Source: Phallusia mammillata
Taxonomy: Eukaryota
Direction of reading: 5' to 3'
Assembly (NCBI GenBank): GCA_965637545.1
Contig: OZ281494.1
Span: 2,108,001-2,172,000, forward strand
Length of the DNA stretch: 64,000 nucleotides
Shown: piece by piece, positions 16,832 through 50,786 of the stretch
Position numbering within the stretch: position 1 is the first letter of the stretch
How the letters are laid out: every line of letters begins with the position of its first letter
Translations under genes and position numbers: made by a program
Notes under the pieces: model-generated
The model's input: only the letters and a program-made list of their open reading frames with translations
Databases searched by the model: none
Told to the model about the DNA's origin: nothing

Positions 16832-19800
16832 ATGACAGGCAAATACAGCATAGTGGCGTTGTGTGTTTTGCTTCTGTTAGTGAACGTTGTCCAAGGTACG
16901 CAATCGCTTGTTAAAAGTAACACACTGTAAACCAATTTGGGTAAAAACAACCCAAAAGCGTTGGGTATCTTGGTGGGGAAACCCATTTTTTTAGGTAGTT
17001 TGAACCCAAAATTGGTTGGGTTAAATACAGTTTTGCCCTATTGATTTACCCAAAAATGTCCAAAATTGATTGAACGTTGTTTTACACAAAAATCATACAG
17101 ATTTCATGTTTTATTTTTAGAAGAAACACACTTTTTTCCAAACTAGCTACAGAAGAAAAAACACGAAAAAACTAATTACAACATACAACACAATTATTCA
17201 TACATTGACAAGTCTGGAATATCAAAATGATACTTGCAAAAATTGTAAAACTTTATCAACATGCAGACAGTATTCATAGTAAAGTACACAATACAATGTA
17301 AATACGGCTTTGATGCCTTTGATGATACCATTCACTTTCAGTATACAGGGTTTTGCTCAGAAAACAAGGTTATTTTTGTGAGCGAATGAAATCTCTCCAT
17401 GTACAACCCAGAAGGGTTGCTGACGATCACCCAATGCTGCTCCCGAACCTTCAAATGGTGTGTTTGCCTGAATATTTAAATATTACCAGCAAACAAACAA
17501 AAACAACATAGTAATTTACCAAATCTAGACAAATACAAACCATATGCTATCCCATACGCAAAATTTAACAAAACATAGGGCTACCAAAAAAATCTCTTTT
17601 CAACCATAAACGCCATTAATAATTAATGTGAAACTTACTTCCAAGTATCAATCTATTTCTGTGGGACGTCCAAGTCACCAAACCATTGGGCAACAAAACA
17701 GTTTACCCAAAATATGTGGGTATGTTGCTGCTGTACCCAAAGTTCTCTCGATCGATTTACCCAAATTGGTTTACAGTGCAAGTAACTTAAAAGCTAAAAA
17801 AATTCAAACGATATATCAAAGCAAGTCGTAACATGGTTTCGCCCAATTTTTAAAATATATAATTCTTTATTGTACTACAGTATGTTCACAAACAACAGAC
17901 GAGTCATGCATAAACGTCAACGAGGACCGCAGAATATGCTTTGGTGAGCTAAATCAAATGTAATAAATCATTGATAATTGTTTTAACATTTTGTCTTATA
18001 GTTTGTGAAGAAAGTGAATACAAGAATCTTAGTTGTACAGACGAAGAAAAAATGCTGAACTTTCCTGTCGACTTTTGTAAAATACAAAGTAATGAGTAAG
18101 TATAGTTTTAAACAATACAGCAATTTGTTCGCGCAATGCTTGTAATTCTAAGAAGGAACAGAAACCACAACAACGTCGTTCGTTGTTTTCGCTGACAAAT
18201 TAGGAACATAAGTTCGAAATTGAAAATGTAAATGTTGAAATTGAAAATGTTACTTGTAACTTTATCGTGTTTATATGTAAAAGGCTATAAACAATTCCTA
18301 CTGGAAGTAGAAACGGCTTACGACTCAATCAAATTCTTGTGGTGTTCGTATGAACTGGGCTACCCTGTCTAAAGTCAAGGAATTTTTATTTATGTGATTT
18401 GTTGTACATCGTATTCATTCGGTTAAAATCGTTACCTTAATCAGATGTCCGTTTTGTTTCTTTTAAGGCCTTACACACCTTTTAATCAAAAATGGCCTGG
18501 TTTAGTGGTTCTCAAACTTTTTAAGTTCATGGCAAGTTTTTATTCCTGGTTTTCCTGTTACCAGCTAAAAATGTTAAAATCTATTCCCGAAGCTTCAAAT
18601 GGATAAATGAGACTGATATTAGCAACGAAAGCGAAATGGGTTGGTAGTTGGGTCCAAATTACCAGTGAGAGTAATATCGAAGAATCAGTCATTTAACTTT
18701 GTATCAAAGTAATTAAATTTTTGTTATTTTTGGGGCGCACCTAGCAACCTACCACGACAGTTTGAAATCCGCATTCAATGTTTTGTATTTCGTTGTTTTT
18801 GTGAAGAAACTGCTCTAACTACAACGTAAGTTCAAGCTGCAAAAACAGAGAGAAACATAAGGAAATGGCGCAAATGATACGAAGCACTTGTCGCAAAAAG
18901 ACTGAATGTCAAATTCCTTCAGGAGCTTGGAGAAACGGACGCTACATGTTGATAACATTCACATGCAGAGAGTGTGGTGGTAAATACCTTTGAAATTCAA
19001 AGCTCCCTTGTTCAGTCTTTTAAAATCTTATCCACTTATGTCTTCTATATATCGTATAATGTATGCCTTGTAAGTTCGATTAATGAAAATGCTTAATTGA
19101 CGATATCCTATATCACATCTGCTCATTTTTAACACTAACTTAGATTTAGCATCAGAATTGTAATGTTTAGATGTGACGTGAAAGATATTATACTACTATT
19201 GTTTTTCGTTCTTATAGCTATTGTTACCTTAAGTAACTTTTAATATTATCTCGGAAAAAATGTTTTACAGAAAGCTGTACAAAAGAAGACATAGCATTTG
19301 AAGGGGAAAGTAATTCGTATCAAGCGCTGAAAATGCTTACCGAAACATCCACGATATACCAGGATAGAAAATCTGAGGCAAGAAGGTTTGGCGGAACAAT
19401 ACCCAACTCTGGTCCGTATCTGTCGGTCGATGACGTTCATCTCAATAACATTTCCACCAGTTCCACTTCGCCTTTTGTTGCTGCTTTGTCGGTCATTAAC
19501 ATAAACTCTTCTAGCAAAGAGCTTTTCAACAACCTGACAACCGAACTGACAACTACAAGATTAACTGATGTTCTCGCAATAGACGACCTACCCTTGGTCT
19601 CTATAGTCGTCGATCAAGAAGATGATTCGGAAGATTCGGAGGATTCGAAAGATTCGGATGATTCGGAGGATTCGGAAGACTCGGAGGATTCAGAAGATTT
19701 GTTTCAAACTAAATTGGCATTTTCTTTGTCGGTTCCAGGCACCACAAACTTTAAAACAGAAATAAAGCCAAAGTTGATGAAGATAGCTGGTGGTAGAGAT

Positions 19801-22150
19801 GTTCTTGTCAAATCAGTCAATTGGATTTGCGTTTTCATTGACCCTGAAACGTATGTGTTTTCAAGGAATGGCTGCGCACTGACAACTAGTGTGAATAGAT
19901 CACAAGTTTCATGTGCTTGCAACCATACCACCATATTTAGTGTGCTTCTTGCCGTGGACGCTGTCATTTTACCAGCTTACATTAAGGTAAATCAAATGCA
20001 TAGGTATACTGACATGAACGTTAATGCAGCTATATCATCAGTGTATAAACACGTACATATTACATCTTACTTCAAACGCAAAAATGTTACTAGTTAATCA
20101 AATGTAGTTTGTACCAGTATCTTAGGAACTTGGAGTCATTGCTTAAATTGTTGAGAAAAACATGAACTTTTTATCAGATCCTGTCTTACATCACCGAAAG
20201 CACAACAGTTTTGTTTCTCATCATTACCGTCATCACAATCTTCAACGTCCGCCATGCGATGGTGAACGACCGAATCTTCGTTCAAATCAACTTGTCGCTG
20301 GCTCTCATGATCTTCCACGCACTAAATTTGACCCATGACCTCGCTATGACGTATCCACAGCTGTGTGAGGCTCTGGCGGTTGCCATGCACTACTTCCTGC
20401 TGTCTTCCGGTAATATTCTATCTCAATCACACGCAACATGACTTCTGCATAGTTGAATTAAAGGATAATCAACACACTTTAACACCAAGACATAATCGAG
20501 GTCATCACCTTTGAAAACACATGGTGTTATACTATCTAATTGACAATAAGCGTCAATTTCTAGATTGTTGGTGATTTAACTTAGGTGATTTTCTAAAGTA
20601 AAATTATTCGCATTTTTCAAGAAAATATGAATGTGCAAGTGCAAACTTTGTTTGATCAACTTTACTTGGATGGTTTTAAAAAAAATCATGATGCGAATTT
20701 GTGATAATTAAACTCTGTGTAACATTAGTTATAAATTTAAATAAACTTGGATGTAAGTTCAGATAAAAACATATAGTCGTTCATCCTTTAGTTTTAACGA
20801 TATAGATATTTAAGGCTTATTAGTCTTTATCCACCAATTTAAGCAACGGACTGGGTGATTCGAGCTTCAAGTTTTAATTGCGAGTATTGTTTGAATAAAC
20901 TTATATTGAATGTTGTTCAACAGTGTTCTGGATGTTGGTGGAGGGAATCACACTTGCCATGAAAACTTCGTCCAAGTCTCTTCAATTCAACGCGATCGAC
21001 CCGACCAAGCTGAACGTAATCAGAGCTCTCGTCGGTTGGGGAATCCCCTCAATCATTACAGCAGCAGCAGCAGTTGTTGGTTTCGTCTTCACAGAGAATT
21101 ACCTCCTTCCAAGTGCGGTGTATCAAGCAGGGTTCAACACTTCCATGTACGACAATACCCTGCGTTGTTTCCTCGACCATCAATCCCATCTCTTCTACTG
21201 GTCGGTGATTGGTCCGATCTGTCTCTGCATTCTCATCAACCTCCTCATTCTCATCCACGTGGTTGTCTTTATTTCCCGCCTAAACGCTGACCAACCGCGC
21301 CGAGGCCGCGTCCGTCGCCCAAACGCGCATGAGAAAATCACAAGGAAGGTCAAGATTCTTGTGGTGGGTGACATCGCAAAGAAGTTGCTGCTGCTCACTC
21401 CTGTCATGGGAATCCCACTAGTGCTAGGAATATTTGTAGGTAAGGCTCTTTCTGTCACTTCTGCGCGCTACTCACGAGTTCCAGTCCCTATATGCTTAAC
21501 AATAAAACAGGATGAGACCATAGTGGGCACATCTAAGTTTTCTTCCGAAAGATTAAGTGTATGCTTAAACACCCCAAAACACACAAATTGGTGTACGGCC
21601 ACAACGTGCACATCTCTTGTTACCTACAGTCGTCCTTAGTGTACTGAGAGTGTTCGTGTGTGTGCTCAAACACATGAAAAACTTTGCTGCACATAAACTG
21701 GTGTGTGGCCACAGCGCGCACATCTAATGTTGCTCACAGTGGTCCTCAGGGCACTAAGGGAGCTTGCGTGTATGCCCAGATACATGAAAAACTTTGCTCA
21801 TAAACTGGTGTAAATAGCAGCGTGGTTATTTAATGTTACTCTAAGTGATCCTCAGTGTACTCAGTGAGCTTGTGTGTGTCAAGAATCAAGTTTACATCGG
21901 TTGACTACCATAAACGTTTTGCTTCACCAGCAATTCGCAACACCAAATTCTTAAAAATACAACACATTTCCATCCTATTATTGTTGCAGGGATAGGTTCA
22001 ACTGAGAGCAACGAGTTCTTCATGTTCACCAATGTGACGGTGAACGGATTGCAAGGTTTATTCATCTTCATCATCTACTGTGTGATGCAAGAAGAAGTTA
22101 GAGAAGCTGTGAAGAGAGCTTGGTCGCGGTTCCAGTGCGGATATGGCTAG
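16832..22150 (+). CDS. Adhesion GPCR copy A (signal peptide, degenerate SUEL/RBL-like domain, GAIN/GPS, 7TM), 672 aa
   Basis: Exons 16832-16895, 17881-17943, 18002-18095, 18807-18979, 19271-19986, 20178-20409, 20924-21439, 21990-22150 (2019 nt, phases consistent). Signal MTGKYSIVALCVLLLLVNVVQ; GPS CVFID...FSRNGC...SCACNHTTIFSVLL; family-B motifs FWMLVEG, GWGIP, NGLQGLFIFIIYC. Confidence 0.92.
16923..17778. mobile_element. CACTG-terminated (CMC/EnSpm-like) non-autonomous DNA transposon in intron 1 of aGPCR A
   Basis: Perfect 23-bp TIR CACTGTAAACCAATTTGGGTAAA, 2-bp TSD CA; the paralogous intron of copy B (about 23945-23960) is the empty site. Confidence 0.85.
19618..19698 (+). repeat. Coding 9-nt tandem repeat GATTCGGA(A/G) giving (Asp-Ser-Glu)n
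   Basis: EDDSEDSEDSKDSDDSEDSEDSEDSEDL in copy A; 27 nt shorter in copy B (ENDLEDSDDSKDLDDSEDL, about 25338-25391). Confidence 0.9.
21585..21880. repeat. ~105-bp tandem repeat in aGPCR A intron 7 (also about 27240-27540 in copy B)
   Basis: About 3 recognisable units with GTGTGGCCACAGCGCGCACATCTAATG...GGTCCTCAG...CATGAAAAACTTTGCT. Confidence 0.75.
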
Positions 22151-23863
22151 AAAACTTAATTTTCCATTTGCATCACGTCGCGAAACACAATGTGTATGAT
22201 GACAAAAGTGACGGAGTTTACTTACATGCTCATTTTCAAATAAAGGATGTTTTCTAGAAATGTAAAGCAGGAATAATTACATCTCTGGAAAGAAAAACTA
22301 AACTAAACTAAAAGCTGAAAAACCTTGACTCCTTTGCTGTAAATAACCAAAACCTATTTATGCTGTTACATGGTCTCGTGTAAAAATGCACAATCTTTTG
22401 ACATTGACCACTAAAATACTGTAGCAGATATCTACACAGACTTTGCCTACAAATGCAGCCTGGATTTTTGCCAAATCCAGGCAATATTTTTGGTCCAAAC
22501 GAGTCGGGAGTAACCGAAGTTTACTGCAGCTTAGCGCAGCTGACGTATATATGTAAATATCTGATCAAAGCATGTTTATTGTGCATTTTTCATTGGTGTA
22601 TTTGATTAACAACCAGACGTTGGAAGCAAAAAAATTATTTGCACATTTGTTTTACAATCTCTTTTGCTAGTTAAACCGAAATTCGGAAAGCGCTATTTGG
22701 CGGCTACAAACTCCTAGTTACTATGCTTTCGACTCTTTCCTCTTCAGCGGGTGCACACGTGTTTCTACATTTATTCTCATAAAAATGTGACTGTTAAACT
22801 CCAGCTGCTAAACTTTGGGCATCGTGTTATAGAAGGTTCTTTTGTAATATTTGCGACACTATTTTTCTTGTGCTGTACATTTATTTACATTTAAAAACAA
22901 AACAAACATAAACAACAATTGCTCCATGATTGACATCAACTGAAGCAACATTTAACACAAATACAACAACTTATCTTTTCTAGGCCATGCTTTCTCCCAG
23001 GGCTAGAAAATTTGTACAGATGAATAAAGTAGTTTTTTTACCTCGCCGCCATTGTGCAAGAGTGCAACTTGCAAATCAAATTCTAAACTATAGAGCATAA
23101 TGACAAAGCCTTAAAGCTCTAAAACAGACACATTGATCACAAAGTGCAAAGATAGAATGTTTGGGAAACACTGGAACAAAACAACAAGTTATGAACAAGG
23201 ATTAAGTATGAAGATTCTAGTCTTTTTCTTTTTCGAACACAGCTTAGTAAAGTACCACGCATTCTTTCAAACTACATCACAACTAAAATTGCGTCAATTG
23301 TTATATTTTTTGAAACATTTTCTATTTCAATTATTCTGCGCTAATTGCCCGATAGACAAACTTATGTTTTAATGTCAGTGACGCCTTAAGATTCGGTCAA
23401 AATGACTGTCGAATATTCGATTCACGCTCTCAGGTTATCCTCTGTTTTCTTGTTATGAAACGGGAAAGTCGCTTGCTCTTACTGCGTCATACAGTTACTG
23501 CAATGGCTTCAAATCATCTGTCATTCCTATCAGCATATACAGCCACTGTATTAGTACGTGAATTCAGGTTAGCGTCTGGTACTGTATATAAACTGGATAA
23601 TTTATGTCCAGAGATAAGCCATGAAATTGCCTAGACTTGGATCAAAGCTTGTTTGTGGTAAAACGTTTTAAGCTCATTTTGTCCCAGTTTAAAATATGTT
23701 ATCATTTATAAGTCATTTTCATTTTCTACAGCATTAATAAGGAATGACTGTAAAGAGGCAATGTTTACATCATTTGAAAAGATTGTGGTTGAAATTTTGT
23801 TCCACTGAACGGTTACAATGTGTTTAGCATGTTAGTGCAGTAAAAACAATTAACAACAAAATT

Positions 23864-26800
23864 ATGACAGGCAAATACAGCAAACTGGCTTTGTGTGTTT
23901 TCTTGCTGTTAGTAAACGTCGTCCAAGGTACGTTGTCCATTGTTGAATGTAACAATAATTTAAATGCCAAAAAAATACAAACGATATATTAAAGCAAACT
24001 GTAAGAAGGTTTCGAAAAACTTCTAAAAAATTAAATCCTTTATTGTACTACAGTATGCTCTCAAACAAACTGCGCACGATATGAGGACAAAGAGGGTTAC
24101 AGAAGATGCTTTGGTGAGCTAAATCTAAAAATAATATAAATGGATTAACACTTGAATATTTTGTCCTATAGTGTGTGATGCTGATGGATACAGAAATATT
24201 AGTTCTGCAGACGGAGGAAAAATGCGGAGATTTCGTGTCGACTTTTGTAAAATAGAAAGTAATCAGTAAGTAGTTTTAAACAATACAGTTTGTTGTGCAA
24301 CGGTGATAATTCTGAGATGCAGAAATGAAACCCGCAACAACGTTGTTAGTTTGCTAGTTGAGTCCAAATTAACATTGAGAGTACTATCGAAGAATTAGTC
24401 ATTTAACTTTGTATTATATAAATTAACTTATTTGGGAACGTACCTAGCTATACCTTCCACGACAGTTTGAAATCCGCTGCTTGAAAATCACAATATTTTG
24501 CATTTCATTGTGTTCGGGAAGAAACTGCGCTAGCTACAACGTGACATCAAGCTGCATCAAACAAAAGAAACATCATCAGAGGGTGCGAATGATACGAGGC
24601 ACTTGTCGCAAAAAGACTGAATGTCAAATTCCTTCAGGAGCTTGGAGAAACGGACGCTACATGTTGATAACATTCTCATGCAAAGGATGTGGTGGTAAAT
24701 ACCTTTGAAATGCATAGCTCCCTTTTTAAGTATTTTCAAATCTTATCCACTTATATCTTCTATATATCTTATAAACAGTTGTATGCCTCGTAAGTTCGAT
24801 TAATGAAAATGTTTAATTGACGATAACCTATATCACATCCGCGTATTTTTAACACTAACCTAGATTTTGCATCGGAATTTTAATGTTTAGATGTGACGTT
24901 AAAGATATTATACTACTATTCTTTTTTGGGGCTTATAGCTATCGTTACCTTAAGTAACTTTTAATATTATCTCGGAAAAATGTTTTACAGATAGCTGTAG
25001 AAAAGAAGACATCGAATTTGAAGGGGAAATTAATTCGTATGAAGCTCTGAACATGCTCACCGAAACATCCCTGATCTACCAGGATAAAAAATCTGAGGCA
25101 AGAAGGTTTAACAAAACAACACCCAATTTTGGTCCTTATTTGTCGGTTGATGACGTTCAACTCAATAATACCTCCACCAGTTCCACTTTGCCATTCGTTG
25201 CTGCTTTGTCGGTCATCAACATCAACTCTTCTAGCAAAGAGCTTTTCAACAACCTGACGACTGAACTGACAACAAAAAGATTAACTGATGTTCTCGCAAT
25301 AGACGACCTACCCTTGGTCTCTATAGTCGTCGATGAAGAAAATGATTTGGAAGATTCGGATGATTCGAAAGATTTGGATGATTCAGAAGATTTATTTCAA
25401 ACCAAAGTGGCATTTTCTTTGTCGGTTCCAGGCACCACAAACTTTAAAACAGAAATAGAGCCAAAGTTAATGAAGAAAGCTGGTGGTAGAGATGTTCTTG
25501 TCAAATCAGTCAATTGGATTTGCGTTTTCATTGACCCTGAAACGTATGTGTTTTCAAGGAATGGCTGCGCACTGACAAGTAGTGTGAATAGATCACAAGT
25601 TTCATGTGCTTGCAATCACACCACCATATTTAGTGTGCTTCTTGCTGTGGACGCTGTCATTTTACCAGCTTACATTAAGGTAAATCAAATGCATGGGTAT
25701 ACAGACATGAACGTTGAACACGGCTATATCATCAGTGTATAAACACGTATATAATAAAGCAAACTTCAAAAGCAACATTGTTATTAGTACTTTGCTCAGT
25801 AGTTTGGGAACATTGCTTAAATTATTGGGACTTTAAAACACAAACTTTTTTATCAGATCCTGTCTTACATCACTGAAAGCACAACGGTTTTGCTTCTTAT
25901 TATTACTGTCATCACAATCTTCAACGTCCGCCATGCGATCGTGAACGACCGAATCTTTGTTCAAATCAACTTGTCACTGGCTCTCATGATCTTCCACGCA
26001 CTCAATTTAATCCATGACGTCGCTATGACGTATCCACTGCTGTGCGAGGCTCTGGCGGTTGCCATGCACTACTTCCTGCTGTCTTCCGGTAATATTCTGT
26101 CTCAATAACACGCAACAGGGTTTACCTATAGTTTAATGAAAGGATAATCAACACGTTTTAACACCAAGACATAAGCGAGGTCATCACCTTTTGAAGACAC
26201 GGCACCAGAGTGATTTTCAATACTATACAACTAATAATCCACGTCAATTTAAAAAAATAAAATTTAGGGTTATTTTCCAAAATAAAATTAAACTGTTCAC
26301 GAAAATATGAATCTAAAAGGTACAAACTTTGTTTGATCAACAGTGCTGTAATGTTTTTTTGAAAAATCATGATAATTGTGAACTCTGTGCAACACTGGTC
26401 TACAAACTAAAATAAACTTGGATGTAAGTTTAGAAAAATACATTTAGTCGTTTACGGTTTATATTAAGCTCATTAGTCTTCATCCACCAATTTAAGCACG
26501 GACTGGGTAATTCTAGCTTCAAGTTTTGATTACGAGCATTGTTTGAATAAACTTATATTGAATGTTGTTCAACAGTGTTCTGGATGTTGGTGGAGGGAAT
26601 CACACTTGCCATGAAAACTTCGTCCAAGTCTCTTCAATTCAACGCGATCAACCCGACCAAGCTGAACGTCATCAGAGCTCTCGTCGGCTGGGGAATCCCC
26701 TCAATCATTACAGCAGCAGCAGCAGCAGTGGTTGGTTTCGTCTTCACAGAGAATTACCTCCTTCCAAGTGCGGTGTATCAAGCAGGATTCAACACTTCCA

Positions 26801-27815
26801 TGTACGACAATACCCTGCGTTGTTTCCTCGACCATCAATCCCATCCCTTCTACTGGTCGGTGATTGGTCCGATCTGTCTCTGCATTCTCATCAACCTTCT
26901 CATTCTCGTCCACGTGGTTGTCTTTATTTCCCGCCTAAACGCTGACCAACCGCGCCGAGGCCGCGTCCGTCGCCCAAACGCGCATGAGAAAATCACAAGG
27001 AAGGTCAAGATTCTTGTGGTGGGTGACATCGCAAAGAAGTTGCTGCTGCTCACTCCTGTCATGGGAATCCCACTAGTGCTAGGAATATTTGTAGGTAAGG
27101 ATATTTCTGTCACTTCTGCGCGCTACTCACGAGTTCCAGTCCCTATATGCTTAACAATAAAACAGGATGAGACCATAGTGGGCACATCTAAGGTTTCTTC
27201 CGAAAGATTAAGTGTATGCTTAAACACCCAAAAACACACAAATTGGTGTACGGCCACAACGTGCACATCTCTTGTTACCTACAGTCGTCCTTAGTGTACT
27301 GAGAGTGTTCGTGTGTGTGTGCTCAAACACATGAAAAACTTTGCTGCACATAAACTGGTGTGTGGCCACAGCGCGCACATCTAATGTTGCTCACAGTGGT
27401 CCTCAGGGCACTAAGGGAGCTTGCGTGTATGCCCAGATACATGAAAAACTTTGCTCATAAACTGGTGTAAATAGCAGCGTGGTTATTTAATGTTACTCTA
27501 AGTGGTCCTCAGTGTACTCAGTGAGCTTGTGTGTGTCAAGAAACATTAAATCAAGTTTACATCGGTTGACTACCATAAACGTTTTGCTTCACCAGCAATT
27601 CGCAACACCAAATTCATAAAAATACAACACATTTCCATCCTATTATTATTGCAGGGATAGGTTCAACTGAGAGCAACGAGTTCTTCATGTTCACCAATGT
27701 GACGGTGAACGGATTGCAAGGTTTATTCATCTTCATCATCTACTGTGTGATGCAAGAAGAAGTTAGAGAAGCTGTGAAGAGAGCTTGGTCGCGGTTCCAG
27801 TGCGCATATGGCTAG
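23864..27815 (+). CDS. Adhesion GPCR copy B, 663 aa
   Basis: Exons 23864-23927, 24054-24113, 24172-24265, 24522-24694, 24991-25679, 25857-26088, 26576-27094, 27655-27815 (1992 nt, phases consistent, no stops). Same motifs as copy A. Confidence 0.92.
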
Positions 27816-28369
27816 AAAACTTAATTTACCATTTGCATCACGTCGCAAAACACAATGTGTATGATGACAAAAGTGACGGAGCTTACTTACAAGCTCATTT
27901 TCAAATAAAGGATGTTTTCTAGAAATGTAAAGCAGGAATAATTACATCTCTGGAAAGAAAAACTAAACTAAACTAAAAGCTGAAAAACCTTGACTCCTTT
28001 GCTGTAAGTAACCAAAACCTATTTATGCTGTTACATGGTCTCGTGTAAAAATGCACAATCTTTTGACATTGACCACTAAAATACTGTAGCAGATATCTTC
28101 ATAGTCATTGTTTAAGCCTACAAATGCAGCCTGGATTTTTTTTTTAATCCAGGCAATATTTTTGGTCCAAACGAGTCGGGAGTAACCGAAGTTTACTGCA
28201 GCTTAGCGCAGCTGACGTATATATGTAAATATCTGATCAAAGCATGTTTATTGTGCATTTTTCATTGGTGTATTTGATTAACAACCAGACGTTGGAAGCA
28301 AAAAAATTATTTGCACATTTGTTTTACAATCTCTTATGCTAGTTAAACCGAAATTCGGAAAGCGCTATT

Positions 28370-28584
28370 AACATGTCGGAAACTGATAGGTTGACAATGA
28401 ATATTTGAGTGCATTTATTTACACAACTATCTGTTATCCGGTTCATATATGACTTTCTGAAGGTGCTTGCAACCACTAAGATATTCCCAATCAATGCAAG
28501 GATGCCCATGATCCATATAAACGCAGTCAAAATAGGGTTGGCAATCATTTCTTTCTGATTGGAGAAAACAGTGTTACGAGAGCT
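28370..28584 (-). pseudogene. 215-bp inserted fragment of the LDLa-GPCR coding sequence (copy of 30146-30360)
   Basis: Matches the hinge-TM1-ICL1-TM2 coding segment of copy 1, flanked by a 110-bp direct duplication (28260-28369 / 28585-28694). Confidence 0.9.
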
Positions 28585-32200: not shown

Positions 32201-32615
32201 ATTTAGTTTCAACAGTATACAAAAAAAGCAACCATTTCCATGCTACACTGCAGAACAAATGGAACTTAGTAAACAATTGCAGACATCATTATCATCAATA
32301 CATCTTAGACTTTCTGTGGCAATATCTTAGACATGATTGGCTGGTCTTTGACACAAGTGAATTAGCTTGGGCCTTAGGGTATTAAAGTAAAAGTATAAAT
32401 CGTTGATCTAATTATGCAATGTAATGCGCCCAATTTGCTATTGCAAAGGCCTATAGAAAGGCGCTGGCAGCTATTGCGAAATAATGACTTATTTCAACTA
32501 CTAATCAAAGACTACATACATAACTTAATATTTACTTACCGTAAGTTTCAAGCCCGTCCGATGGGAACTTTTTAATCAACAGAACCAAAGAAAACAACAC
32601 AACAGTCCTAATCAT
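29215..32615 (-). pseudogene. LDLa-repeat GPCR copy 1, nonsense codon early in exon 2
   Basis: Signal exon 32615-32540 (MIRTVVLFSLVLLIKKFPSDGLETY, donor GTAAGT), exon 2 32147-29215 after TTTTTTAG acceptor; in-frame TAA at 32118-32116 where copies 2 and 3 have TAC (QYC-Y-P). The rest of the frame is open. Confidence 0.72.
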
Positions 32616-35002: not shown

Positions 35003-35098
35003 GGTTTATTCATCTTCATCATCTACTGTGTGATGCAAGAAGAAGTGAGAGAAGCTGTGAAGAGAGCTTGGTCGCGGTTCCAGTGCGGATATGGCTAG
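35003..35098 (+). pseudogene. Orphan 3' part of the aGPCR last exon (GLFIFIIYCVMQEEVREAVKRAWSRFQCGYG*)
   Basis: Near-identical to 22055-22150; lacks the acceptor, fused out of frame to the pentraxin ATG at 34986. Confidence 0.88.
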
Positions 35099-36186: not shown

Positions 36187-39100
36187 TCAGGTAGTAACCA
36201 TTTCTGTAGTCGTCCGCACCTCAGAAACAACTCGAACTTTCCTACATTTTTCCAATGCGTTGTCAATCACAGAAGAATAAAGCAACGGATTGAGGGCGCT
36301 GTTGATCGGAAGCAAAACCGCAGCTGCAAGCACATAAACGATATCAGACAATACTACACCACCAAGCGACAGATAACTGAGGATGCAAATCGGAATCCAG
36401 CAACAGAAATCGGTAAGAAGCAATCTGGAAATGCGCTTTTGCATTTTGGCGCTCGTATCATTGCTTTTGGACTTGGCCATGCGATTGCTGCGTCGATAAA
36501 TGAGGACATAAGCGGCAACCATGAAAATAAACATGATGAAATTCAATGTGATAATAAACAGTGAATATCCCCAAGCTGAATGGCTTTCTGAAGCAAAGAG
36601 TCTCGGCAAACACACGCTGGTTTTGGCGTAGTAACCAAACTCTCCTTTGATTGATTGCCCTGGCATGTTGATGTCGATGACTCGTTTAGCGTCGTGCCAT
36701 GATAACACGGTGCTGTTGGTGGGTGATATACGTTGTGCCAAAAGCATTGCAGCTTCAAAAGAAACAAAATCACGTTTGTGAACAAAATTAGGAAACCAGA
36801 TTGTTGTTACAAAGTAACCAGATGTAAAATTAATTGTGGGAACGATGGCAATGACCAAAGCAACACACCAAGTGAAGAAACACCCCAATATAATCCATTT
36901 AGGCCCTAGAGACATAGTAAGAAATGGGTTCCACACAGACACAAGTCGATAGACTGATATCAATGCCATGGTTAAAGCCGATGTTTGAGATGAAATGACG
37001 CACAATGCACCTAGGATCGAGCATTGTGTGCTCGAACGCCATTCAGCATCAAAATAACAATAACTTCCTGAAAACTGGGCACTTTTAGCTGCAACAGCAA
37101 GTAAATAGATTCCCATTAACATGTCGGAAACTGATAGATTAACAATGCAAATTTGAGTGCATTTATTTACACAACTATCTGTTATCCGGTTCATATATGA
37201 CTTTCTGAAGGTGCTTGCAACCACTAGGATATTCCCAATCAATGCAAGGATGCCCATGATCCATATAAACGCAGTCAAAATAGGGTTGGCAATCATTTCT
37301 TTCTGATTGGAGAAAACAGTGTTACGAGAGCTGACAGGTGGGCATTCGTCACTGCCGTCCGAGCAGTCTTTGATTCCGTCTTCCTTTTCTGTAATGGGCA
37401 CTGAGAGTGGATTCCCATTAAGACAATAAAATCTCTTATTCTCACAACGATCCTTTGCCTCATCCGATTTATCGTCACAGTCGTAGTTTCCATCGCAAAC
37501 TTTCATGACGTCAATGCTTATGAAATTTCCACTGCTGCAAATATAGCGTTTGGGACAAAGTGATTCGTTGTAATATCCGCGATGTATACCATCGCACACC
37601 CATGTGGGACTTGACATAAACTCAGGGTCATTGCAGAAAGCTGCTGGATTGGGGCAACTTTCGCACTCATCCCCTGAACCAAAACATTCAGGTCTTCCAT
37701 CGCATGCTACACCATATGTAAGGCTCCCGCTGCATAAGGTCAAATCAAGTTGTGGATAGCAATATTTGGTGTTGCTCATGTTCAAGCAGTTTACATCTTG
37801 GTTGCACAGCACAGAATCTATTGGAAGGCAATCTGTTTGGTTGTAGCAGTGCATATGACCTGGTGGACAAGTTGATTGAGAATCGCCAAGGACGGCTTTG
37901 CACACCGTCTGATTCTCGCACAAACATTCATCTGACAGGTCGTAGCAGTCAATTACACCATCGCACACCTGATTCTTTGAGATAACTAGTCTCTTGTCCA
38001 GGCAAAGGAAGCATCGAAATTCTCCGTTGACGAAACACAGATCAGATTTGTCAGCGCACTGGGCATCTTGATCGTAGAGATTGATTTGGGACAAGCTACA
38101 TGGAAATGTAAACCAATATCCAAGACATTTGAAACTCGGGTGTGTTTGGATGTGGTAATCCCATGAAAATATTGAGAAACAGAAGAAAAACATAGCGTTC
38201 TTAATTTTGTTGTTATAATCCCGATAAAAAACCGGAGGTGCTGTCAGTACCCCGTCAAGAGGTTGGCATTGAGGAATGCTGCACATCCAGTAATCATCAG
38301 TACAAACTTGATCCTTGTGTCCTTGACACGGCCTGTGATGCTGAATGCAGTGTGAAGAATTGTTTGCTTGATACATCATAAATCTCTCCATCGATTTTTT
38401 ACTGGTGCAATTAAATAAATAATGTCCGCAGTTTATGTCGTAAAGATCGGCCCACAACAGACAAGGTTCATCGCTTTGATCAATGCAGTCCGGTATACCA
38501 TCGGCCACCGTTGTGTTAGGTATGCATTGCCCAATAGTCGGACATATCTGTTCACCATAGATGCATCCACACATTACTTGATCACCACTACATGTGCAAT
38601 TGGTTTCGTCGCTGCTGTCATCGCAGTCCAACTTCCCGTTGCATTTTAAAGATAAAGGAATGCATTTAGAATCGCACTCAAATTCATGTTTCCAGCAAGG
38701 ACAGTTGGAAAGGACTTCATCGCTGTAATCTTTACAATCATCGATCCTGTCACATACCTTCGAGCTTGGCAAACAGCCACTCAATCCAGCACATGTGTTA
38801 CTTTCATAACATGCACATTGAAACTCATCAACTGGGCAAGTGCAATTCACTTCGTCTGTTCCATCTAAGCAGTCGTAGACTCCATCACATATTTGTGTCT
38901 TTTCATAACATCCCAATCCATATGTGCAATTACTGTCTCTTGGAAAACAGCCGCATTGGTATTGGTTTGCGTTACACGTTGTTTTGTTGAATGCATCACA
39001 CAAGCCGACAGGAAAACAATAATACGAATCAACTGTAGATGAACTGTTGTCTGAGTTGGTTGGTGGGCATCCACAAATCGCTTTGGGGTAGCAATATTGG

Positions 39101-39587
39101 TGCCAAAGGCGACATTGTTCTAAAAAAGAAAATCGTTGCAGTTACACACGCTGCTAAAATTTGAATACCATAATTTAGTTTCAACAGTACTCAAAAAAAG
39201 CAACCATTTCCATGCTACACTGCAGAACAAATGGAACTTAGTAAACAATTGCAGACATCATTATCATCAATACATCTTAGACTTTCTGTGGCAATATCTT
39301 AGACATGATTGGCTGGTCTTTGACACAAGTGAATTAGCTTGGGCCTTAGGGTATTAAAGTAAAAGTATAAATCGTTGATCTAATTATGCAATGTAATGCG
39401 CCCAATTTGCTATTGCAAAGGCCTATAGAAAGGCGCTGGCAGCTATTGCGAAATAATGACTTATTTATACTACTAATCAAAGACTACACACATAACTTAA
39501 TATTTACTTACCGTAAGTTTCAAGCCCGTCCGATGGGAACTTTTTAATCAACAGAACCAAAGAAAACAACACAACAGTCCTAATCAT
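36187..39587 (-). CDS. LDLa-repeat GPCR copy 2 (GRL101/RXFP-like 7TM, no LRR), about 1002 aa
   Basis: Signal exon 39587-39512 joined in phase 1 to exon 39119-36187. About 10 LDLa-like modules (e.g. CDGVYDCLDGTDEVNC, CDGNYDCDDKSDE); 7TM motifs IGNILVV, NLSVSDMLMGIYL, YYAKTSVCLP, TDFCCWIP, PINSALNPLLY. Confidence 0.93.
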
Positions 39588-41962: not shown

Positions 41963-42058
41963 GGTTTATTCATCTTCATCATCTACTGTGTGATGCAAGA
42001 AGAAGTGAGAGAAGCTGTGAAGAGAGCTTGGTCGCGGTTCCAGTGCGGATATGGCTAG
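41963..42058 (+). pseudogene. Second orphan aGPCR last-exon tail
   Basis: Same junction and sequence as 35003-35098. Confidence 0.88.
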
Positions 42059-43129: not shown

Positions 43130-46100
43130 TCAGGTAGTAACCATTTCTGTAGTCGTCCGCCCCTCAGAAACAACTCGAACTTTCCTACATTTTTCCAATG
43201 CGTTGTCAATCACAGAAGAATAAAGCAACGGATTGAGGGCGCTGTTGATCGGAAGCAAAACCGCAGCTGCAAGCACATAAACGATATCCGACAATACTAC
43301 ACCACCAAGCGACAGATAACTGAGGATGCAAATCGGAATCCAGCAACAGAAATCGGTAAGAAGCAATCTGGAAATGCGCTTTTGCATTTTGGCGCTGGTA
43401 TCATTGCTTTTGGACTTGGCCATGCGATTGCTGCGTCGATAAATGAGGACATAAGCGGCAACCATGAAAATAAACATGATGAAATTCAATGTGATAATAA
43501 ACAGTGAATATCCCCAAGCTGAATGGCTTTCTGAAGCAAAGAGTCTCGGCAAACACACGCTGGTTTTGGCGTAGTAACCAAACTCTCCTTTGATTGATTG
43601 CCCTGGCATGTTAATGTCGATGACTCGTTTAGCGTCATGCCATGATAACACGGTGCTGTTGGTGGGTGATATACGTTGTGCCAAAAGCATTGCAGCTTCA
43701 AAAGAAACAAAATCACGTTTGTGAACAAAATTAGGAAACCAGATTGTTGTTACAAAGTAACCAGATGCAAAATTAATTGTGGGAATGATGGCAATGACCA
43801 AAGCAACACACCAAGTGAAGAAACACCCCAATAAAATCCATTTAGGCCCCAGAGACATAGTAAGAAATGGGTTCCACACAGACACAAGTCGATAGACTGA
43901 TATCAATGCCATGGTTAAAGCCGATGTTTGAGATGAAATGACGCACAATGCACCTAGGATCGAGCATTGTGTGCTTGAACGCCATTCAGAATCAAAATAA
44001 CAATAACTTCCTGAAAACTGGGCACTTTTAGCTGCAATAGCAAGTAAATAGATTCCCATTAACATGTCGGAAACTGATAGGTTGACAATGCAAATTTGAG
44101 TGCCTTTGTTTACACTGTTATTAAGATTCCAGGTTCGGTATGACTTTCTGACGGTGGTTGCAACCACTAGGATATTCCCAATCAATGCAAGGATACCCAT
44201 GATCCATATAAACGCAGTCAAAATAGGGTTGGCAATCATTTCTTTCTGATTGGAGAAAACAGTGTTACGAGAGCTGACAGGTGGACATTCGTCACTGCCG
44301 TCCGAGCAGTCTTTGATTCCGTCTTCCTTTTCTGCAATGGGCACTGAGAGTGGATTCCCATTAAGACAATAAAATCTCTTATTCTTACAACGATCCTTTG
44401 CCTCATCCGATTTATCGTCACAGTCGTAGTTTCCATCGCAAACTTTCATGACGTCAATGCTTATGAAGTTTCCACTGCTGCAAATATAGCGTTTGGGACA
44501 AAGTGATTCGTTGTAGGAGCCACGCTGTATCCCATCGCACACAAATGTTGTACTTGCCATAAACTCAGTGTCATTGCAGAAAGGTGCTGGATTGGGGCAA
44601 TTGTCGCACTCATCCCCTAAACCAACACATTCAGGTCTTCCGTCGCATGCTACGACATACGTTGATCTGCATAAGGTCAAGTCAAGTTGTGGATAACAAT
44701 ATTTGGTGTTATTAATGTCCAAGCAATTCATCGATTGGTTGCACAACACAGAATCTATTGGAAGACAATCTGTTTGGTTGTAGCAGTGCATATGACCTAG
44801 TGGACAAGTGGATTGGGAATCGCCAAGGACAGCTTTGCACACCGTCTGATTCTCGCACAAGCATTCATCTGACAGGTCGTAGCAGTCAATCACTCCATCG
44901 CACACCTGATTCTTTGAGATAACCAGTCTCTTGTCCAAGCAAAGGAAGCATCGGAATTCGCCGTTGACGAAACACAGATCGGATTTGTCAGCGCACTGGG
45001 CGTCTTGATCGTAGAGATTGATTTGGGGCAAGCTACATCGATATGTTAACCAATATCCAAGACATTTGAAACTTGGGTGTGCATGGATATGGTAGTCCCA
45101 TGAAAATATTGAGGGACAGAAATGAAACATTGCGCTCAGAATTTTTTTGTTATGATTCTGATAAAAAACCGGTGGTGCTGGCAGTACCCCGCCAAGGGGT
45201 TGGCATTTAGGAATGCTGCATATCCAGTAATCATCAGTACAAACTTCATCCTTCTGGCCTTGACACGGTCTGTGATGCTGAATGCAATGCGAAGAATTCA
45301 TTTCTTTGTACTTCAAAAATCTCTCCATCGATTTTTTACTGGTGCAGTTAAATAAATTATGTCTGCAGTTTATGCCGTAAAGTTCACCCAACGACTGACA
45401 AGGCTCATCGCTTTGATCAATGCAGTTTAGTGTACCATCGGCCACCAATGTGTTAGTTAGGCATTGTCCAGTAGCAGGACATATCTGTTCACCATAAATG
45501 CATCCGCACATTACTTGATCACCACTACATGTGCAATTAGTTTCGTCACTGGTGTCTTCGCAGTCGAAATTCTCGTTACATTTTAAAGATAAAGGAATGC
45601 ATTTAGAATCGCACTCAAATTCATGTTCCCAGCAAGGGCAGTTGGAAAGGACTTCATCGCTGTAATCTTTACAATCATCGACCCTGTCACATACCTTCGA
45701 GCTTGGCAAACAGCCACTCAATCCAGCACATGTGTTACTTTCATAACATGCACATTGAAACTCATCAACTGGGCAAGTGCAATTCACTTCGTCCGTTCCA
45801 TCTAAGCAGTCGTAGATTCCATCACATATTTGTGTCTTTTCATAACATCCCAATCCATATGTGCAATTATTGTCTCTTGGAAAACAGCCGCATTGGTATT
45901 GGTTTGCATTGCACGCTGTTTTGTTGAACATATCACACCATTCGAAAGGAAAACAATAATACGAATGAAATGTAGATGAACTATTGTCCGGCCTTGTTGG
46001 TGGACAACCACACACCACAAGCTCTTCGGGGTAACAATACTGCTGCTCAAGCCGACATTGTTCTGCAAAACATCGTTTCAGTTACAAACTTTGAAAAATG

Positions 46101-46448
46101 ATACCGTAATTTATCTTCGAAATTAATCAAAAACTTGCAGCAAAAATAAAAGCAACCATGTTGATTGTAAAAAGGGCACTTCATAAAATAAACTCATCAT
46201 CGTCATCAGTACATCTTAGACTTTCTCTGACAATATCAATGACATTAATGACTGGTCTTTGACACAAGTGAATCAGCTTAGGCCTTAGGGTATTAAGTTA
46301 AAAAACTATAAATCATAATGACTTATTTCAACTACTAATCAAAGACTACACATACAACTTAAATTTACTTACCGTAAGTTACAAGCCCGTCCGATGGGAA
46401 ATTGTTGATCAACCGAACCACAGAAAACAATATCAGGGTCCTAATCAT
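43130..46448 (-). CDS. LDLa-repeat GPCR copy 3 (diverged ectodomain), about 1002 aa
   Basis: Signal exon 46448-46373 (MIRTLILFSVVRLINNFPSDGLVTY) joined to exon 46062-43130 after TGTTTTGCAG acceptor; open frame with same motifs as copy 2. Confidence 0.93.
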
Positions 46449-49311: not shown

Positions 49312-50786
49312 ATGCATCCAACTTATACCCTGCTTATTTTGCTTGCTTTTGTTTCCTTCAGTGCTGGTGAAGTGGGAGAAAATTGCACAAGTAAGTTGTA
49401 CTGGAATAACAAGTTTATAAGTTACATAACCTTGCAGTAAAATTATTACCAGTTTTCATTTTCTGGTATTACGTTTTAAGTTATTTACAGGTGAAATTCT
49501 GCAACTTCAGCAGAAAGTAACTAAACTCAACAAACAAGTTTCATTGGCGTATTCCAAACCAACTGTACCAACAACAAGTAAGTTGTATAAACAACAGAAC
49601 ATTTGCTCGAAATATGTTGTTTCAAAATAAGTATCATGGCTGTTGCACAGTTTGCAATGGTCCACTCATTAATAAACTATTGTAGAATAAATATTCATAG
49701 ACTGAAAAGTATGAATGGACATCAATGTATATTTTATGCAGCGCATCTCCACAGCATTACGAAAATCATATTACAGATTGTACCTTGACTCACTTTGAGT
49801 TTCCACGTCAGCAGCAAAACGAAGATTTCGTCTGGTACAGAATGCACTTTCCCAGACTAACGAGCGCCACCATGTGTGCATGGGTCAAAATAGCTCCGAC
49901 GTTTGATCTCAGTTTCATGAGTTATGCAACTAACAAATATAGCAACGAGTTTTTAATTTTCTTTGACAATCCAACCACACTTCAAGTTTACATACAAGAT
50001 AGTGTAGTCGAGTTTAAATTTCCTGATGCAGAAAAAATGGTAAGTTTGTAAGGATTTTTTCCCGGATTTGGTTCCTGAGCGCGCAGACTGATTGACTTTT
50101 GTTTGTCACGTGGATTTGACTAGAGGCACAACTTGTATGTAATATTTGCTAGACTATCCGACAACAAAATAACAAATACGAGCCTTTACCTGTTTTGCTC
50201 CATTGCACAATACGCTATACTACTAAATTGAGCACCTTTTAATTTTCATAACAACTCAAAAAGTTTTTGATGTTAGATTTCTCTCTTCATAGATGATATA
50301 TGAATTAAAATATAATCGCTTTAATTTGTCGGAAATTTGTCAAACCATCACCATCCTTTCATGTATCTCGACTTACCGGCTGTCACTTCAAATGTCATCA
50401 GTCCCTTCCAAAAGACTGTAAGTTGTTCGTGACAACGAAAGACTTAGATTTGTTATGTTAAGGTGACGATCGGTAAAAAAAGATCGTTAGGTTTACTCCT
50501 CCTTTACGAATGACATACGGATTGTCAAAACGTCATGTTTAAACGAATAAATTGATTGTGTGTGTTTTGGCAAATTGTATGTTGATGCCGGAAAAAAGGA
50601 AATGCGACATAACGAGTTGAGTGAATAACAACAAGTGCCTTGCAGATTCATGTATGCGTCTGGTTCGATTCCAAACGAGCTGTGATTGGAGCTTTTGGCA
50701 ATGGTGAAGAAATTCCCTCACAAGGTTATCCTGGATATGTTGTCAATGGAGGAAGAAGTTTAATCCTTGGACAAGATCAGGACGCG
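49312..50786 (+). CDS. Secreted pentraxin-domain protein, apparently lacking its final exon(s)
   Basis: Exons 49312-49390 (signal MHPTYTLLILLAFVSFSAG), 49491-49577 (short coiled coil EILQLQQKVTKLNKQVS), 49777-50039 (FEFPRQ...LTSATMCAWVK...FMSYATNKYSNEFLIF), 50646-50786 (IHVCVWFDS...GGRSLILGQDQDA). Pentraxin motifs HxCxxW and LGQ(D/E)QD are present; the C-terminal ~45 aa was not found before 52724. Confidence 0.85.

What the first reader, a model, noticed from the sequence alone, without database searches (positions are those of the whole stretch)
16832..50786. Compact cluster of three unrelated candidate recognition proteins amplified by nested duplication
Seen: lectin-like-domain adhesion GPCR x2 (+), LDLa-repeat GPCR x3 (-, tail-to-tail with the aGPCR), and a secreted pentraxin (+, head-to-head with the LDLa-GPCR), with ectodomains diverging and 7TM regions homogenised. 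Known: SUEL lectin, LDLa and pentraxin domains bind glycans, lipoprotein/complement-type ligands and microbial surfaces; tandem amplification with ectodomain diversification is typical of immune, allorecognition and chemosensory loci. Inference: a fast-evolving sensing locus, possibly a soluble pentraxin plus two GPCR classes; functional coupling is not shown by the sequence.
Basis: partly seen in the sequence, partly recalled or inferred. Interest (0 to 1): 0.72.

Follow-up and report, generated by a model that had tools for sequence, protein, structure and literature searches.

The report
Sea-squirt receptor and pentraxin gene cluster
This stretch of a sea-squirt (Phallusia) chromosome holds recently copied genes for two kinds of orphan cell-surface receptor and one broken pentraxin gene. 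They lie together because a three-gene block was duplicated repeatedly, and nothing shows that the proteins work together.

Summary
The genes are real, at the stated places and orientations. There are two intact adhesion-GPCR genes (seven exons, 650 and 642 aa), three two-exon LDLa-repeat GPCR genes (1002 codons each) and one pentraxin gene.

Corrections:
- LDLa-GPCR copy 1 has an in-frame TAA at codon 36.
- The pentraxin loses homology at 50790 and has no last exon, so it is probably dead.
- The SUEL-lectin label is not supported by Pfam or by relatives; only a weak language-model lead supports it.

Nested duplication is confirmed at base level. The LDLa-GPCR unit junction joins pentraxin codon 6 to the middle of aGPCR exon 7, so the ancestral order was aGPCR, LDLa-GPCR, pentraxin.

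Homogenisation of the 3' halves is confirmed and includes non-coding DNA, which indicates gene conversion. Ectodomain divergence shows no replacement excess (omega 0.2-0.4 in the LDLa-GPCRs, about 1 and not significant in the aGPCR N-terminus).

The window is one edge of a roughly 200-kb super-cluster. The LDLa-GPCRs belong to the tunicate LDLRR-GPCR family described in Ciona in 2008. Adjacent windows of this genome were already judged the same way in this scan. An immune or sensory role and pentraxin-receptor coupling remain untested.

The parts
16835..22150 (+). Adhesion GPCR copy A1, 7 exons (16835-16895, 18002-18095, 18807-18979, 19271-19986, 20178-20409, 20924-21439, 21990-22150), 650 aa, intact. 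Order of parts: signal peptide, Cys-containing N-terminal module (exons 2-3), acidic Ser/Asp stalk, GPS, 7TM.
   Evidence: Pfam GPS and 7tm_2. Exon 7 matches TM7 of class-B and adhesion GPCRs in the PDB. All introns are AG/GT and the frame is open. Intron 1 holds a dispersed repeat at 17008-17757.
23867..27815 (+). Adhesion GPCR copy A2, 7 exons (23867-23927, 24172-24265, 24522-24694, 24991-25679, 25857-26088, 26576-27094, 27655-27815), 642 aa, intact.
28367..28584 (.). 218-bp patch 100% identical to the LDLa-GPCR copy 1 coding sequence at 30143-30360 (TM1 region). It is flanked on both sides by a repeated 110-bp piece of the aGPCR 3' flank, so it is a complex rearrangement junction.
29215..32615 (-). 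LDLa-repeat GPCR copy L1: exon 1 at 32540-32615 (signal peptide) and exon 2 at 29215-32147. In-frame TAA at 32116-32118 (codon 36), so a probable recent pseudogene.
34996..35002 (.). Tandem-unit junction, repeated identically at 41956-41962. The first 17 nt of the pentraxin coding sequence are joined out of frame to the middle of aGPCR exon 7 (TM7) across a short imperfect microhomology.
36187..39587 (-). LDLa-repeat GPCR copy L2: exon 1 at 39512-39587 and exon 2 at 36187-39119, 1002 aa, intact.
43130..46448 (-). LDLa-repeat GPCR copy L3: exon 1 at 46373-46448 and exon 2 at 43130-46062, 1002 aa, intact.
49312..50790 (+). Pentraxin gene truncated at its 3' end. Signal-peptide exon from 49312, linker exon about 49490-49597, pentaxin exons about 49768-50051 and about 50634-50790. 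Pfam profile positions 3-134 of 194 are present. The last exon is missing.
50819..51003 (.). Interspersed repeat of about 185 bp, 28 nt beyond the point where pentraxin homology stops. It has 623 first-look candidates genome-wide at 93-96% identity and is present in many transcripts.
211..11979 (+). Full striatin gene (Striatin N-terminal domain and WD40 repeats). Its 3' two thirds (6273-13714) are duplicated at 52772-60754.
52772..60754 (+). Partial striatin copy without the N-terminal exons, 85-95% identical to 6273-13714. It belongs to a larger duplication that also carries a third intact aGPCR copy (A3, 645 aa) just beyond the window's end.

Best explanation
The window is the left edge of a roughly 200-kb birth-and-death multigene cluster on chromosome piece C1 of Phallusia mammillata or a very near relative.

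Origin. An ancestral three-gene block lay next to the striatin gene. It comprised a GPS-only adhesion GPCR, a convergent LDLRR-type orphan GPCR (about six to eight LDLa modules and a family-specific Cys-rich spacer on a relaxin-receptor-like 7TM, no LRRs) and a divergent short pentraxin. Non-homologous or microhomology-mediated segmental duplications then amplified the block:
- a 7.2-kb aGPCR unit was duplicated;
- a 6.96-kb unit running from the middle of aGPCR exon 7 to pentraxin codon 6 was triplicated;
- a larger segment (3' part of striatin plus an aGPCR) was copied to a position beside the pentraxin gene, which is truncated there.

Later change. Gene conversion or unequal exchange repeatedly overwrote the 3' halves of the copies, non-coding DNA included. 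The 5' halves kept their older divergence under moderate purifying selection. Copies are already being lost: there is a nonsense codon in L1, the pentraxin is truncated and the striatin copy lacks its 5' exons.

Function (inferred, not shown). The intact genes most likely encode working orphan receptors. L2 and L3 would signal through the conserved R3.50 and NPxxY core, as their RXFP/LGR relatives do. A1 and A2 would act as GAIN/GPS tethered-agonist adhesion receptors. The three families lie together because they were copied together, not because a functional pairing has been shown.
For: Domains and family:
- Pfam domains.
- The 7TM is nearest to RXFP1, TSHR, LHCGR and LGR4; the ectodomain is nearest to LRP2 and VLDLR LDLa repeats.
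- The best homologues, at 35-42% identity, are Ciona, Clavelina, Styela and Phallusia LDLa+7tm_1 proteins. This family was described as LDLRR-GPCR in Ciona (PMC2396169).
- Family motifs are shared with those homologues.

Species: a UniRef Phallusia mammillata protein matches this genome at 99%.

Gene models: conserved signal-peptide exon and acceptor, intact 1002-aa frames in L2 and L3 and a TAA in L1, intact 7-exon aGPCRs.

Duplication and loss:
- Junctions at base level.
- Mosaic site patterns and a drop in dS that includes non-coding flank.
- Pentraxin truncation.

Genome context:
- Super-cluster map and dispersed pentraxin-plus-receptor blocks.
- Large family size: 535 first-look 7TM candidates, and all 109 that were scored have E < 1e-106.
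Against: - No expression evidence. Four small RNA-type contig sets covered only two repeats, so the 'intact' genes could be silent.
- Copy number and the L1 nonsense codon rest on one assembly.
- The order of the duplication events is inferred from junctions and divergence and was not tested on a rooted tree.
- Recurrent pentraxin/LDLa-GPCR proximity at three independent dispersed loci could also reflect selection to keep the pair together.
Confidence: 0.8

Rival explanations
1. The pentraxins are secreted ligands or co-receptors of the neighbouring LDLa-GPCRs, possibly with the aGPCR as well. The genes are kept linked and co-amplified because they act as a recognition module.
For: Linkage within the genome is strongly non-random. 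The super-cluster holds about 10 pentraxin genes or fragments and 13 LDLa-GPCRs. Four of six dispersed LDLa-GPCR copies, representing three independent loci, have a pentraxin piece 3-7 kb away. Every triplicated LDLa-GPCR unit carries the full intergenic region up to the pentraxin start codon.
Against: - The window's own pentraxin is truncated.
- Pentraxin pieces at the dispersed loci are mostly fragments, and several of the receptors beside them carry stops.
- Orientation and order vary: divergent, co-oriented and convergent arrangements all occur.
- The pentraxin's closest paralogue (90%) sits in a pentraxin-only array.
- No pentraxin or aGPCR lies within 10 kb of six related loci in Ciona, Clavelina and a metagenome contig.
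- There are no expression or binding data.
Confidence: 0.1
2. The locus is an immune, allorecognition or chemosensory receptor array whose ligand-binding ectodomains are under diversifying selection.
For: - Tandem amplification, rapid turnover and a very large family in this genome.
- The highest dN lies in ectodomain residues 191-330 of the LDLa-GPCR.
- One exon pair of the aGPCR has omega 2.5.
- The aGPCR stalk and N-terminus have no detectable relatives among 1.84 billion representatives.
Against: - Omega is 0.2-0.42 throughout the LDLa-GPCR ectodomain, and dS is highest where dN is highest.
- In the aGPCR N-terminal exons pN/pS is 0.55-1.35, with Fisher p of 0.52, 0.10 and 0.05; the last two lean towards constraint.
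- No tissue or challenge data exist.
Confidence: 0.1
3. Some of the near-identical tandem copies, especially L1/L2 and the 98-100% identical 3' parts of A1/A2, are uncollapsed haplotypes or other assembly artefacts of a highly heterozygous genome.
For: L1 and L2 differ by only about 1% in the ectodomain. The two unit junctions are identical over the 61 nt inspected. The two DNA-type runs hold only 0.78-0.79 of the sampled words.
Against: - The window has no N or gap.
- The copies are mosaics. L1 is closest to L2 in the 5' part and L2 is closest to L3 in the 3' part, which haplotype duplication does not predict.
- At least ten further copies of the same unit lie downstream.
- The junctions are specific chimeras of gene pieces.
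Confidence: 0.05

Closest known systems
Ciona LDLRR-GPCRs (Kamesh, Aradhyam and Manoj 2008, PMC2396169)
   Same: Tandem LDLa modules lie directly on a rhodopsin-type 7TM that resembles the INSL3/relaxin receptors. There are no LRRs. The family is a lineage-specific tunicate expansion, the genes are tandemly arrayed (seen) and all are orphan.
   Different: Identity to any Ciona or Clavelina member is only 35-42%. The family appears far larger here: at least 109 full-length 7TM matches and 535 candidates, against 14-15 confirmed members and 14 unclassified LGR-like sequences reported for Ciona. This subfamily is embedded with pentraxins and a GPS-only aGPCR.
RXFP1/RXFP2 (LGR7/8) and Lymnaea GRL101
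   Same: The 7TM core is the closest solved relative (7tmw, E 7e-23). LDLa modules lie in the ectodomain.
   Different: There is no LRR domain. There are many LDLa modules rather than one. The acidic residue of the E/DRY motif is absent across the tunicate family. No relaxin-type ligand is implied.
Ascidian 'GPS-only' unclassified adhesion GPCRs, with latrophilins (ADGRL) as the lectin-bearing comparison
   Same: GPS plus 7tm_2. Nine of ten nearest relatives scanned have no other Pfam domain, as reported for 21 of 30 Ciona aGPCRs. The weak nearest solved 7TM matches are ADGRL2, ADGRL4 and ADGRG2.
   Different: There is no Pfam SUEL lectin, olfactomedin or HormR domain. The GPS tripeptide reads H-T-T rather than H-L-T/S. 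The stalk has no relatives outside this genome.
Short pentraxins (CRP/SAP type), reported from Ciona and Didemnum (PMC5465252)
   Same: A signal peptide is followed by a Pentaxin-family domain. Intact paralogues with a complete last exon lie 30-50 kb downstream.
   Different: The window's copy lacks the last third of the domain. A short heptad-like linker exon precedes the domain.
Birth-and-death receptor arrays with gene conversion (general model of multigene family evolution)
   Same: Tandem units, mosaic conversion tracts, pseudogenes and fragments.
   Different: Three unrelated families are co-amplified as one block. No evidence of diversifying selection was found.

Membership tests
LDLRR-GPCR (tunicate LDLa-repeat, LRR-less rhodopsin-type GPCR) | Rhodopsin-family 7TM most similar to relaxin/INSL3 and glycoprotein-hormone receptors | tested here: met
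   Pfam 7tm_1. Among 7TM chains, the best PDB matches are RXFP1 at E 7e-23, then TSHR, LHCGR, FSHR and LGR4.
LDLRR-GPCR (tunicate LDLa-repeat, LRR-less rhodopsin-type GPCR) | One to many tandem LDLa modules at the N-terminus | tested here: met
   Four to five Pfam-significant Ldl_recept_a stretches. Five to six acidic-cage motifs and 73 Cys in residues 1-600.
LDLRR-GPCR (tunicate LDLa-repeat, LRR-less rhodopsin-type GPCR) | No leucine-rich repeats between the LDLa modules and the 7TM | tested here: met
   No LRR family among the Pfam hits at E <= 0.01.
LDLRR-GPCR (tunicate LDLa-repeat, LRR-less rhodopsin-type GPCR) | Closest relatives are tunicate proteins of the same architecture | tested here: met
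   The top hits are Ciona, Clavelina, Styela and Phallusia proteins with PF00057 plus PF00001. TM motifs and a long conserved ECL2 are shared.
LDLRR-GPCR (tunicate LDLa-repeat, LRR-less rhodopsin-type GPCR) | Ligand and G-protein coupling | not testable with these tools
   The whole family is orphan.
Adhesion GPCR | Secretin-type 7TM (7tm_2) with all seven helices | tested here: met
   Exon 5 covers profile positions 18-90 and exon 6 covers 93-229. Exon 7 matches TM7 of CRF1R, ADGRD1, PTH1R and others. The spliced frame is intact.
Adhesion GPCR | GPS motif immediately before TM1 | tested here: met
   Pfam GPS, E 3e-8.
Adhesion GPCR | Autoproteolysis consensus H-L-T/S at the GPS | tested here: inconclusive
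   The sequence reads H-T-T followed by a hydrophobic Stachel-like stretch. Cleavage cannot be judged from sequence.
SUEL / rhamnose-binding lectin domain (PF02140) | Match to the family profile, or a lectin fold | tested here: not met
   - No Pfam hit at E <= 1 for the window's N-terminal exons or for two paralogues.
- None of ten relatives carries the domain.
- The AlphaFold model of a paralogue's module has pLDDT 38 and is unusable.
- Only the language-model atlas lists SUEL_Lectin clusters, at 0.87, below its 0.9 lead threshold.
- The joined exons 2+3 were not searched.
Pentraxin | Complete pentaxin domain (about 194 profile positions) | tested here: not met
   Only profile positions 3-134 are present. 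The last exon found in paralogues is absent, and nucleotide homology stops at 50790.
Pentraxin | Secretion signal | tested here: inconclusive
   A hydrophobic N-terminal exon at 49312 is conserved in paralogues. No signal-peptide predictor was available.
Diversifying immune/allorecognition-type receptor locus | Replacement excess (omega > 1) in the ligand-binding region | tested here: not met
   Omega is 0.2-0.42 in the LDLa-GPCR ectodomain. pN/pS is 0.55-1.35 in the aGPCR N-terminal exons, not significantly above 1.
Diversifying immune/allorecognition-type receptor locus | Expression in immune or sensory cells, induction by challenge, high population polymorphism | not testable with these tools
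   The RNA-type runs available were small and covered only repeats.

The most novel reading that the evidence does not exclude
Intact pentraxins of the super-cluster are soluble pattern-recognition partners that dock, in a Ca2+-dependent way, on the LDLa modules of the neighbouring LDLRR-GPCRs and trigger their relaxin-receptor-like 7TM. That would be a humoral-to-cellular innate sensing pathway invented in ascidians and amplified as a gene block.
Probability: 0.06. Interest if true: 0.8.

Novelty: new member of a known kind. Interest (0 to 1): 0.35.

Why it matters
The case shows at base-pair resolution how a chordate receptor cluster grows. The junctions are chimeras of gene pieces, conversion tracts include non-coding DNA, and copies are lost almost as soon as they are made.

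It also adds to evidence that the orphan LDLRR-GPCR family, with 14-15 confirmed members in Ciona, has at least a hundred and possibly several hundred members in Phallusia. That would make it one of the largest receptor families of this animal, with no known ligand.

The repeated proximity to pentraxins gives a concrete and cheap de-orphanisation hypothesis to test. At present the sequence evidence is explained by co-duplication alone.

Tried and rejected
- SUEL lectin. Pfam on every N-terminal exon of A1 and A2 and on two divergent paralogues found nothing. A PDB sequence search gave only a spurious designed-repeat hit. AlphaFold on a five-sequence alignment of the module gave pLDDT 38, which is unusable, so no fold search was run. 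Exons 2+3 were not joined for any search tool. Spliced coding sequences were assembled only inside local scripts, to check reading frames and compute dN/dS.\n- Expression. One run search and one read-laying run were allowed. Four RNA-type contig sets covered only two interspersed repeats (47940-48116 and 50819-51004), so there is no information on the genes.\n- Pentraxin as an N-terminal domain of the LDLa-GPCR. I considered a fused gene because several blocks are co-oriented. I rejected it because paralogous pentraxin last exons end in a stop, each LDLa-GPCR has its own conserved signal-peptide exon, and none of 120 homologues carries PF00354.\n- Pentraxin as the N-terminus of the aGPCR, as in ADGRD or ADGRG. 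I rejected this on gene order and strand.\n- Synteny in relatives. Only six loci of non-orthologous homologues (35-42% identity) could be inspected. All were negative. This is weak evidence because true orthologues may not exist.\n- Large HMMER search with aGPCR exon 4. It gave 33 hits, none below 1e-10, all confined to the GPS-proximal third.
Full report
WHAT IS THERE

The window is G000:C1:2,108,001-2,172,000 of a 240-Mb tunicate assembly. A UniRef protein labelled Phallusia mammillata matches the genome at 99% over a 710-residue exon. The organism is therefore that species or a very near relative. The window has 32-42% G+C and no N.

The gene order from left to right is:
- A complete striatin gene on the + strand. 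The Striatin N-terminal domain lies at 211-498 and the WD40 exons run to 11979.
- Two adhesion-GPCR genes on the + strand, A1 and A2.
- Three LDLa-repeat GPCR genes on the - strand, L1 to L3.
- One pentraxin gene on the + strand.
- A partial striatin copy at 52772-60754.

A third aGPCR copy, A3, lies just beyond the window's end.

GENE MODELS

LDLa-GPCRs. Each LDLa-GPCR is a two-exon gene. A 76-nt exon encodes a signal peptide and ends in a consensus donor. It is conserved in L1-L3 and in paralogues that are only about 80% identical. The acceptor in front of the long exon is conserved in fourteen copies. The coding sequences have 1002 codons. L2 and L3 are open. L1 carries TAA at codon 36 (32116-32118), where L2 has TAC.

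Pfam finds 4-5 significant LDLa modules plus 7tm_1 and no LRR. The nearest solved 7TM is RXFP1, followed by the glycoprotein-hormone receptors and LGR4. The ectodomain resembles the LDLa runs of LRP2 and VLDLR.

aGPCRs. The aGPCR has seven exons with canonical splice sites and an open frame in A1 (650 aa), A2 (642 aa) and A3 (645 aa). It matches TM7 of class-B and adhesion GPCRs in the PDB. The GPS motif is significant, but the cleavage tripeptide reads H-T-T.

Pentraxin. The gene has a signal-peptide exon at 49312, a short linker exon and two pentaxin exons covering profile positions 3-134 of 194. Intact paralogues 30-50 kb downstream have one more exon of about 65 residues. tblastn finds that exon in every other pentraxin of the region but not in the window.

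Nucleotide homology to five paralogues stops at 50790. After 28 unrelated bases comes an abundant interspersed repeat of about 185 bp. This pentraxin is therefore truncated and probably dead, unless it is spliced to something downstream, which I could not test.

THE LECTIN LABEL

- Exons 2 and 3 of the aGPCR encode a small Cys-containing module with a pattern that recalls the C-terminal half of a SUEL domain.
- Pfam finds nothing at E <= 1 in any copy or in two divergent paralogues.
- A full HMMER search with exon 4 found only 33 weak relatives, aligned to the GPS-proximal part only. Nine of the ten scanned are GPS-only aGPCRs, and none has a lectin domain.
- The language-model atlas lists SUEL_Lectin clusters first, but at 0.87, which the tool itself treats as a lead only.
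- A structure prediction was useless, with pLDDT 38.
Each exon was searched by reference, and spliced sequences were built only in local scripts.
- Verdict: 'lectin-like' is unproven.

DUPLICATION ARCHITECTURE

The LDLa-GPCR unit repeats with a period of 6961 bp. Its junction, identical at 34996-35002 and 41956-41962, joins the first 17 nt of the pentraxin coding sequence to the middle of aGPCR exon 7, out of frame, across a short imperfect microhomology.

The ancestral order was therefore aGPCR, LDLa-GPCR, pentraxin. The segment from mid-exon 7 to pentraxin codon 6 was triplicated. Each copy took along the complete intergenic region between the LDLa-GPCR and the pentraxin.

The aGPCR unit runs from 15979 to 23217, and its right end falls at the position of the LDLa-GPCR stop codon. 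A3's flank ends at the same point.

Between A2 and L1 sits a 218-bp patch that is 100% identical to the TM1 region of L1. It is bracketed by a duplicated 110-bp flank piece, the kind of complex junction left by template switching.

The striatin 3' part plus an aGPCR was copied as a larger block that now follows the truncated pentraxin.

HOMOGENISATION VERSUS DIVERSIFICATION

LDLa-GPCR. Along the LDLa-GPCR unit, sites where L3 differs from L1 and L2 run at 20-30 per 250 bp. They drop to 0-3 over the last 1.45 kb (TM3 to the stop codon, plus 640 bp of non-coding flank). There the pattern 'L2 = L3, L1 different' dominates. L2-L3 differences are 8.5% before the change point and 1.3% after it (p = 3e-16).

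Synonymous divergence is 0.15-0.26 in the ectodomain and 0.06-0.10 in the 7TM. This is gene conversion or unequal exchange, not merely constraint. Omega in the ectodomain is 0.21-0.42, and it is no higher where dN peaks (residues 191-330), because dS peaks there too.

aGPCR. A1-A2 identity is 75-89% in the 5' part and 98-100% from exon 6 through intron 6, exon 7 and the 3' flank. dS falls from 0.25-0.56 in the N-terminal exon 3 and the stalk to 0.04-0.10. In the N-terminal exons pN/pS is 0.55-1.35 and never significantly above 1.

So '7TM homogenised' is right. 'Ectodomains diverging' is right as a description. Selection for diversity is not shown.

WIDER CONTEXT

The window is one end of a super-cluster at C1:2.113-2.314 Mb. 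It holds five aGPCR copies, 13 LDLa-GPCR copies of this subfamily and about ten pentraxin genes or fragments, in changing orders and orientations.

Six further subfamily copies are dispersed. Four of them, representing three independent loci, have a pentraxin piece 3-7 kb away. Those pieces are mostly fragments, and several of the receptors carry stops. With 31 pentraxin exon hits in 240 Mb, this proximity is far beyond chance. It is what co-duplication of a block predicts.

The 7TM alone finds 535 first-look candidates. All 109 that were scored are full-length matches with E < 1e-106, and most lie in open frames of more than 1000 codons. The family is much larger here than the 14-15 confirmed members plus 14 unclassified LGR-like sequences described in Ciona.

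In Ciona, Clavelina and one metagenome contig, six loci of the nearest homologues (35-42% identity) show tandem LDLa-GPCRs. They show no pentraxin or aGPCR within 10 kb, either by annotation or by tblastn.

EXPRESSION

Four RNA-type contig sets of the same species label covered only two short interspersed repeats. This says nothing about the genes.

COMPARISON WITH WHAT IS KNOWN

- The LDLa-GPCRs meet every testable defining feature of the LDLRR-GPCR family of Kamesh et al. 2008 (PMC2396169).
- The aGPCR is of the ascidian GPS-only kind noted in the same paper.
- Pentraxins are known from Ciona and Didemnum (PMC5465252).
- Earlier notes of this scan on adjacent windows (s1-368997, s1-399072, s1-399095) reached the same reading independently of my work. 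I checked their main claims on this window.

VERDICT

The cluster is real and well resolved, but ordinary in kind. It consists of new members of known families in a birth-and-death cluster. Functional coupling and an immune or sensory role remain open hypotheses with low prior probability.

Noticed in passing
window 32116-32118: L1 carries an in-frame TAA at codon 36, where L2 has TAC. The rest of the 1002-codon frame is open, so this is either a very recent pseudogene or a segregating null allele.
   Followed up: yes
window 28367-28584: A 218-bp patch copied without any change from the TM1 region of L1 (30143-30360). It lies between two copies of a 110-bp flank piece, which looks like a template-switch junction.
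   Followed up: partly
window 34940-35095 and 41900-42055: Each extra LDLa-GPCR unit carries a relic: the pentraxin start codon plus 14 nt fused out of frame to the second half of aGPCR exon 7 (TM7 and tail).
   Followed up: yes
window 50819-51003, also 47940-48116 and 5079-5235 (-): Short interspersed repeats. The repeat at 50819-51003 is about 185 bp, with 623 first-look candidates at 93-96% identity on all large contigs. A related copy lies at 5079-5235 (-). Contigs from many different transcripts in the RNA-type runs cover the patches at 50819-51003 and 47940-48116.
   Followed up: partly
window 17008-17757: A dispersed repeat of about 630-750 bp, with at least ten copies at 88-92% identity, is inserted in intron 1 of A1 only.
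   Followed up: partly
window 211-11979 and 52772-60754: There is a complete striatin gene and a copy without the N-terminal exons, 85-95% identical. The copy keeps open WD40 exons. Other notes of the scan deal with it.
   Followed up: partly
whole genome (G000): The LDLRR-GPCR family seems to have at least a hundred and possibly several hundred members in this genome, mostly intact single long exons on C3, C5, C6 and C1. The GPS/7tm_2 aGPCR family is also large: 155 candidates, with dense arrays at C1:5.3-5.8 and 6.4-6.9 Mb.
   Followed up: partly
G000:C1:5483001-5501000 and 5662001-5680000 (L009/L023, L010/L024): Two dispersed blocks give identical hit patterns: an LDLa-GPCR with a stop, a fused pentraxin fragment and a distant aGPCR. 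They are a segmental duplication of each other, 180 kb apart.
   Followed up: no
window 19570-19700 (A1 exon 4): The acidic stalk is a run of Asp/Glu-Ser repeats whose length differs between A1, A2 and A3 by in-frame indels of about 6-9 residues.
   Followed up: no
window numbering 70477 (G000:C1:2178477), beyond the window: A3's 3' flank loses homology at exactly the point that corresponds to the LDLa-GPCR stop codon, as A1's does at 23217.
   Followed up: no
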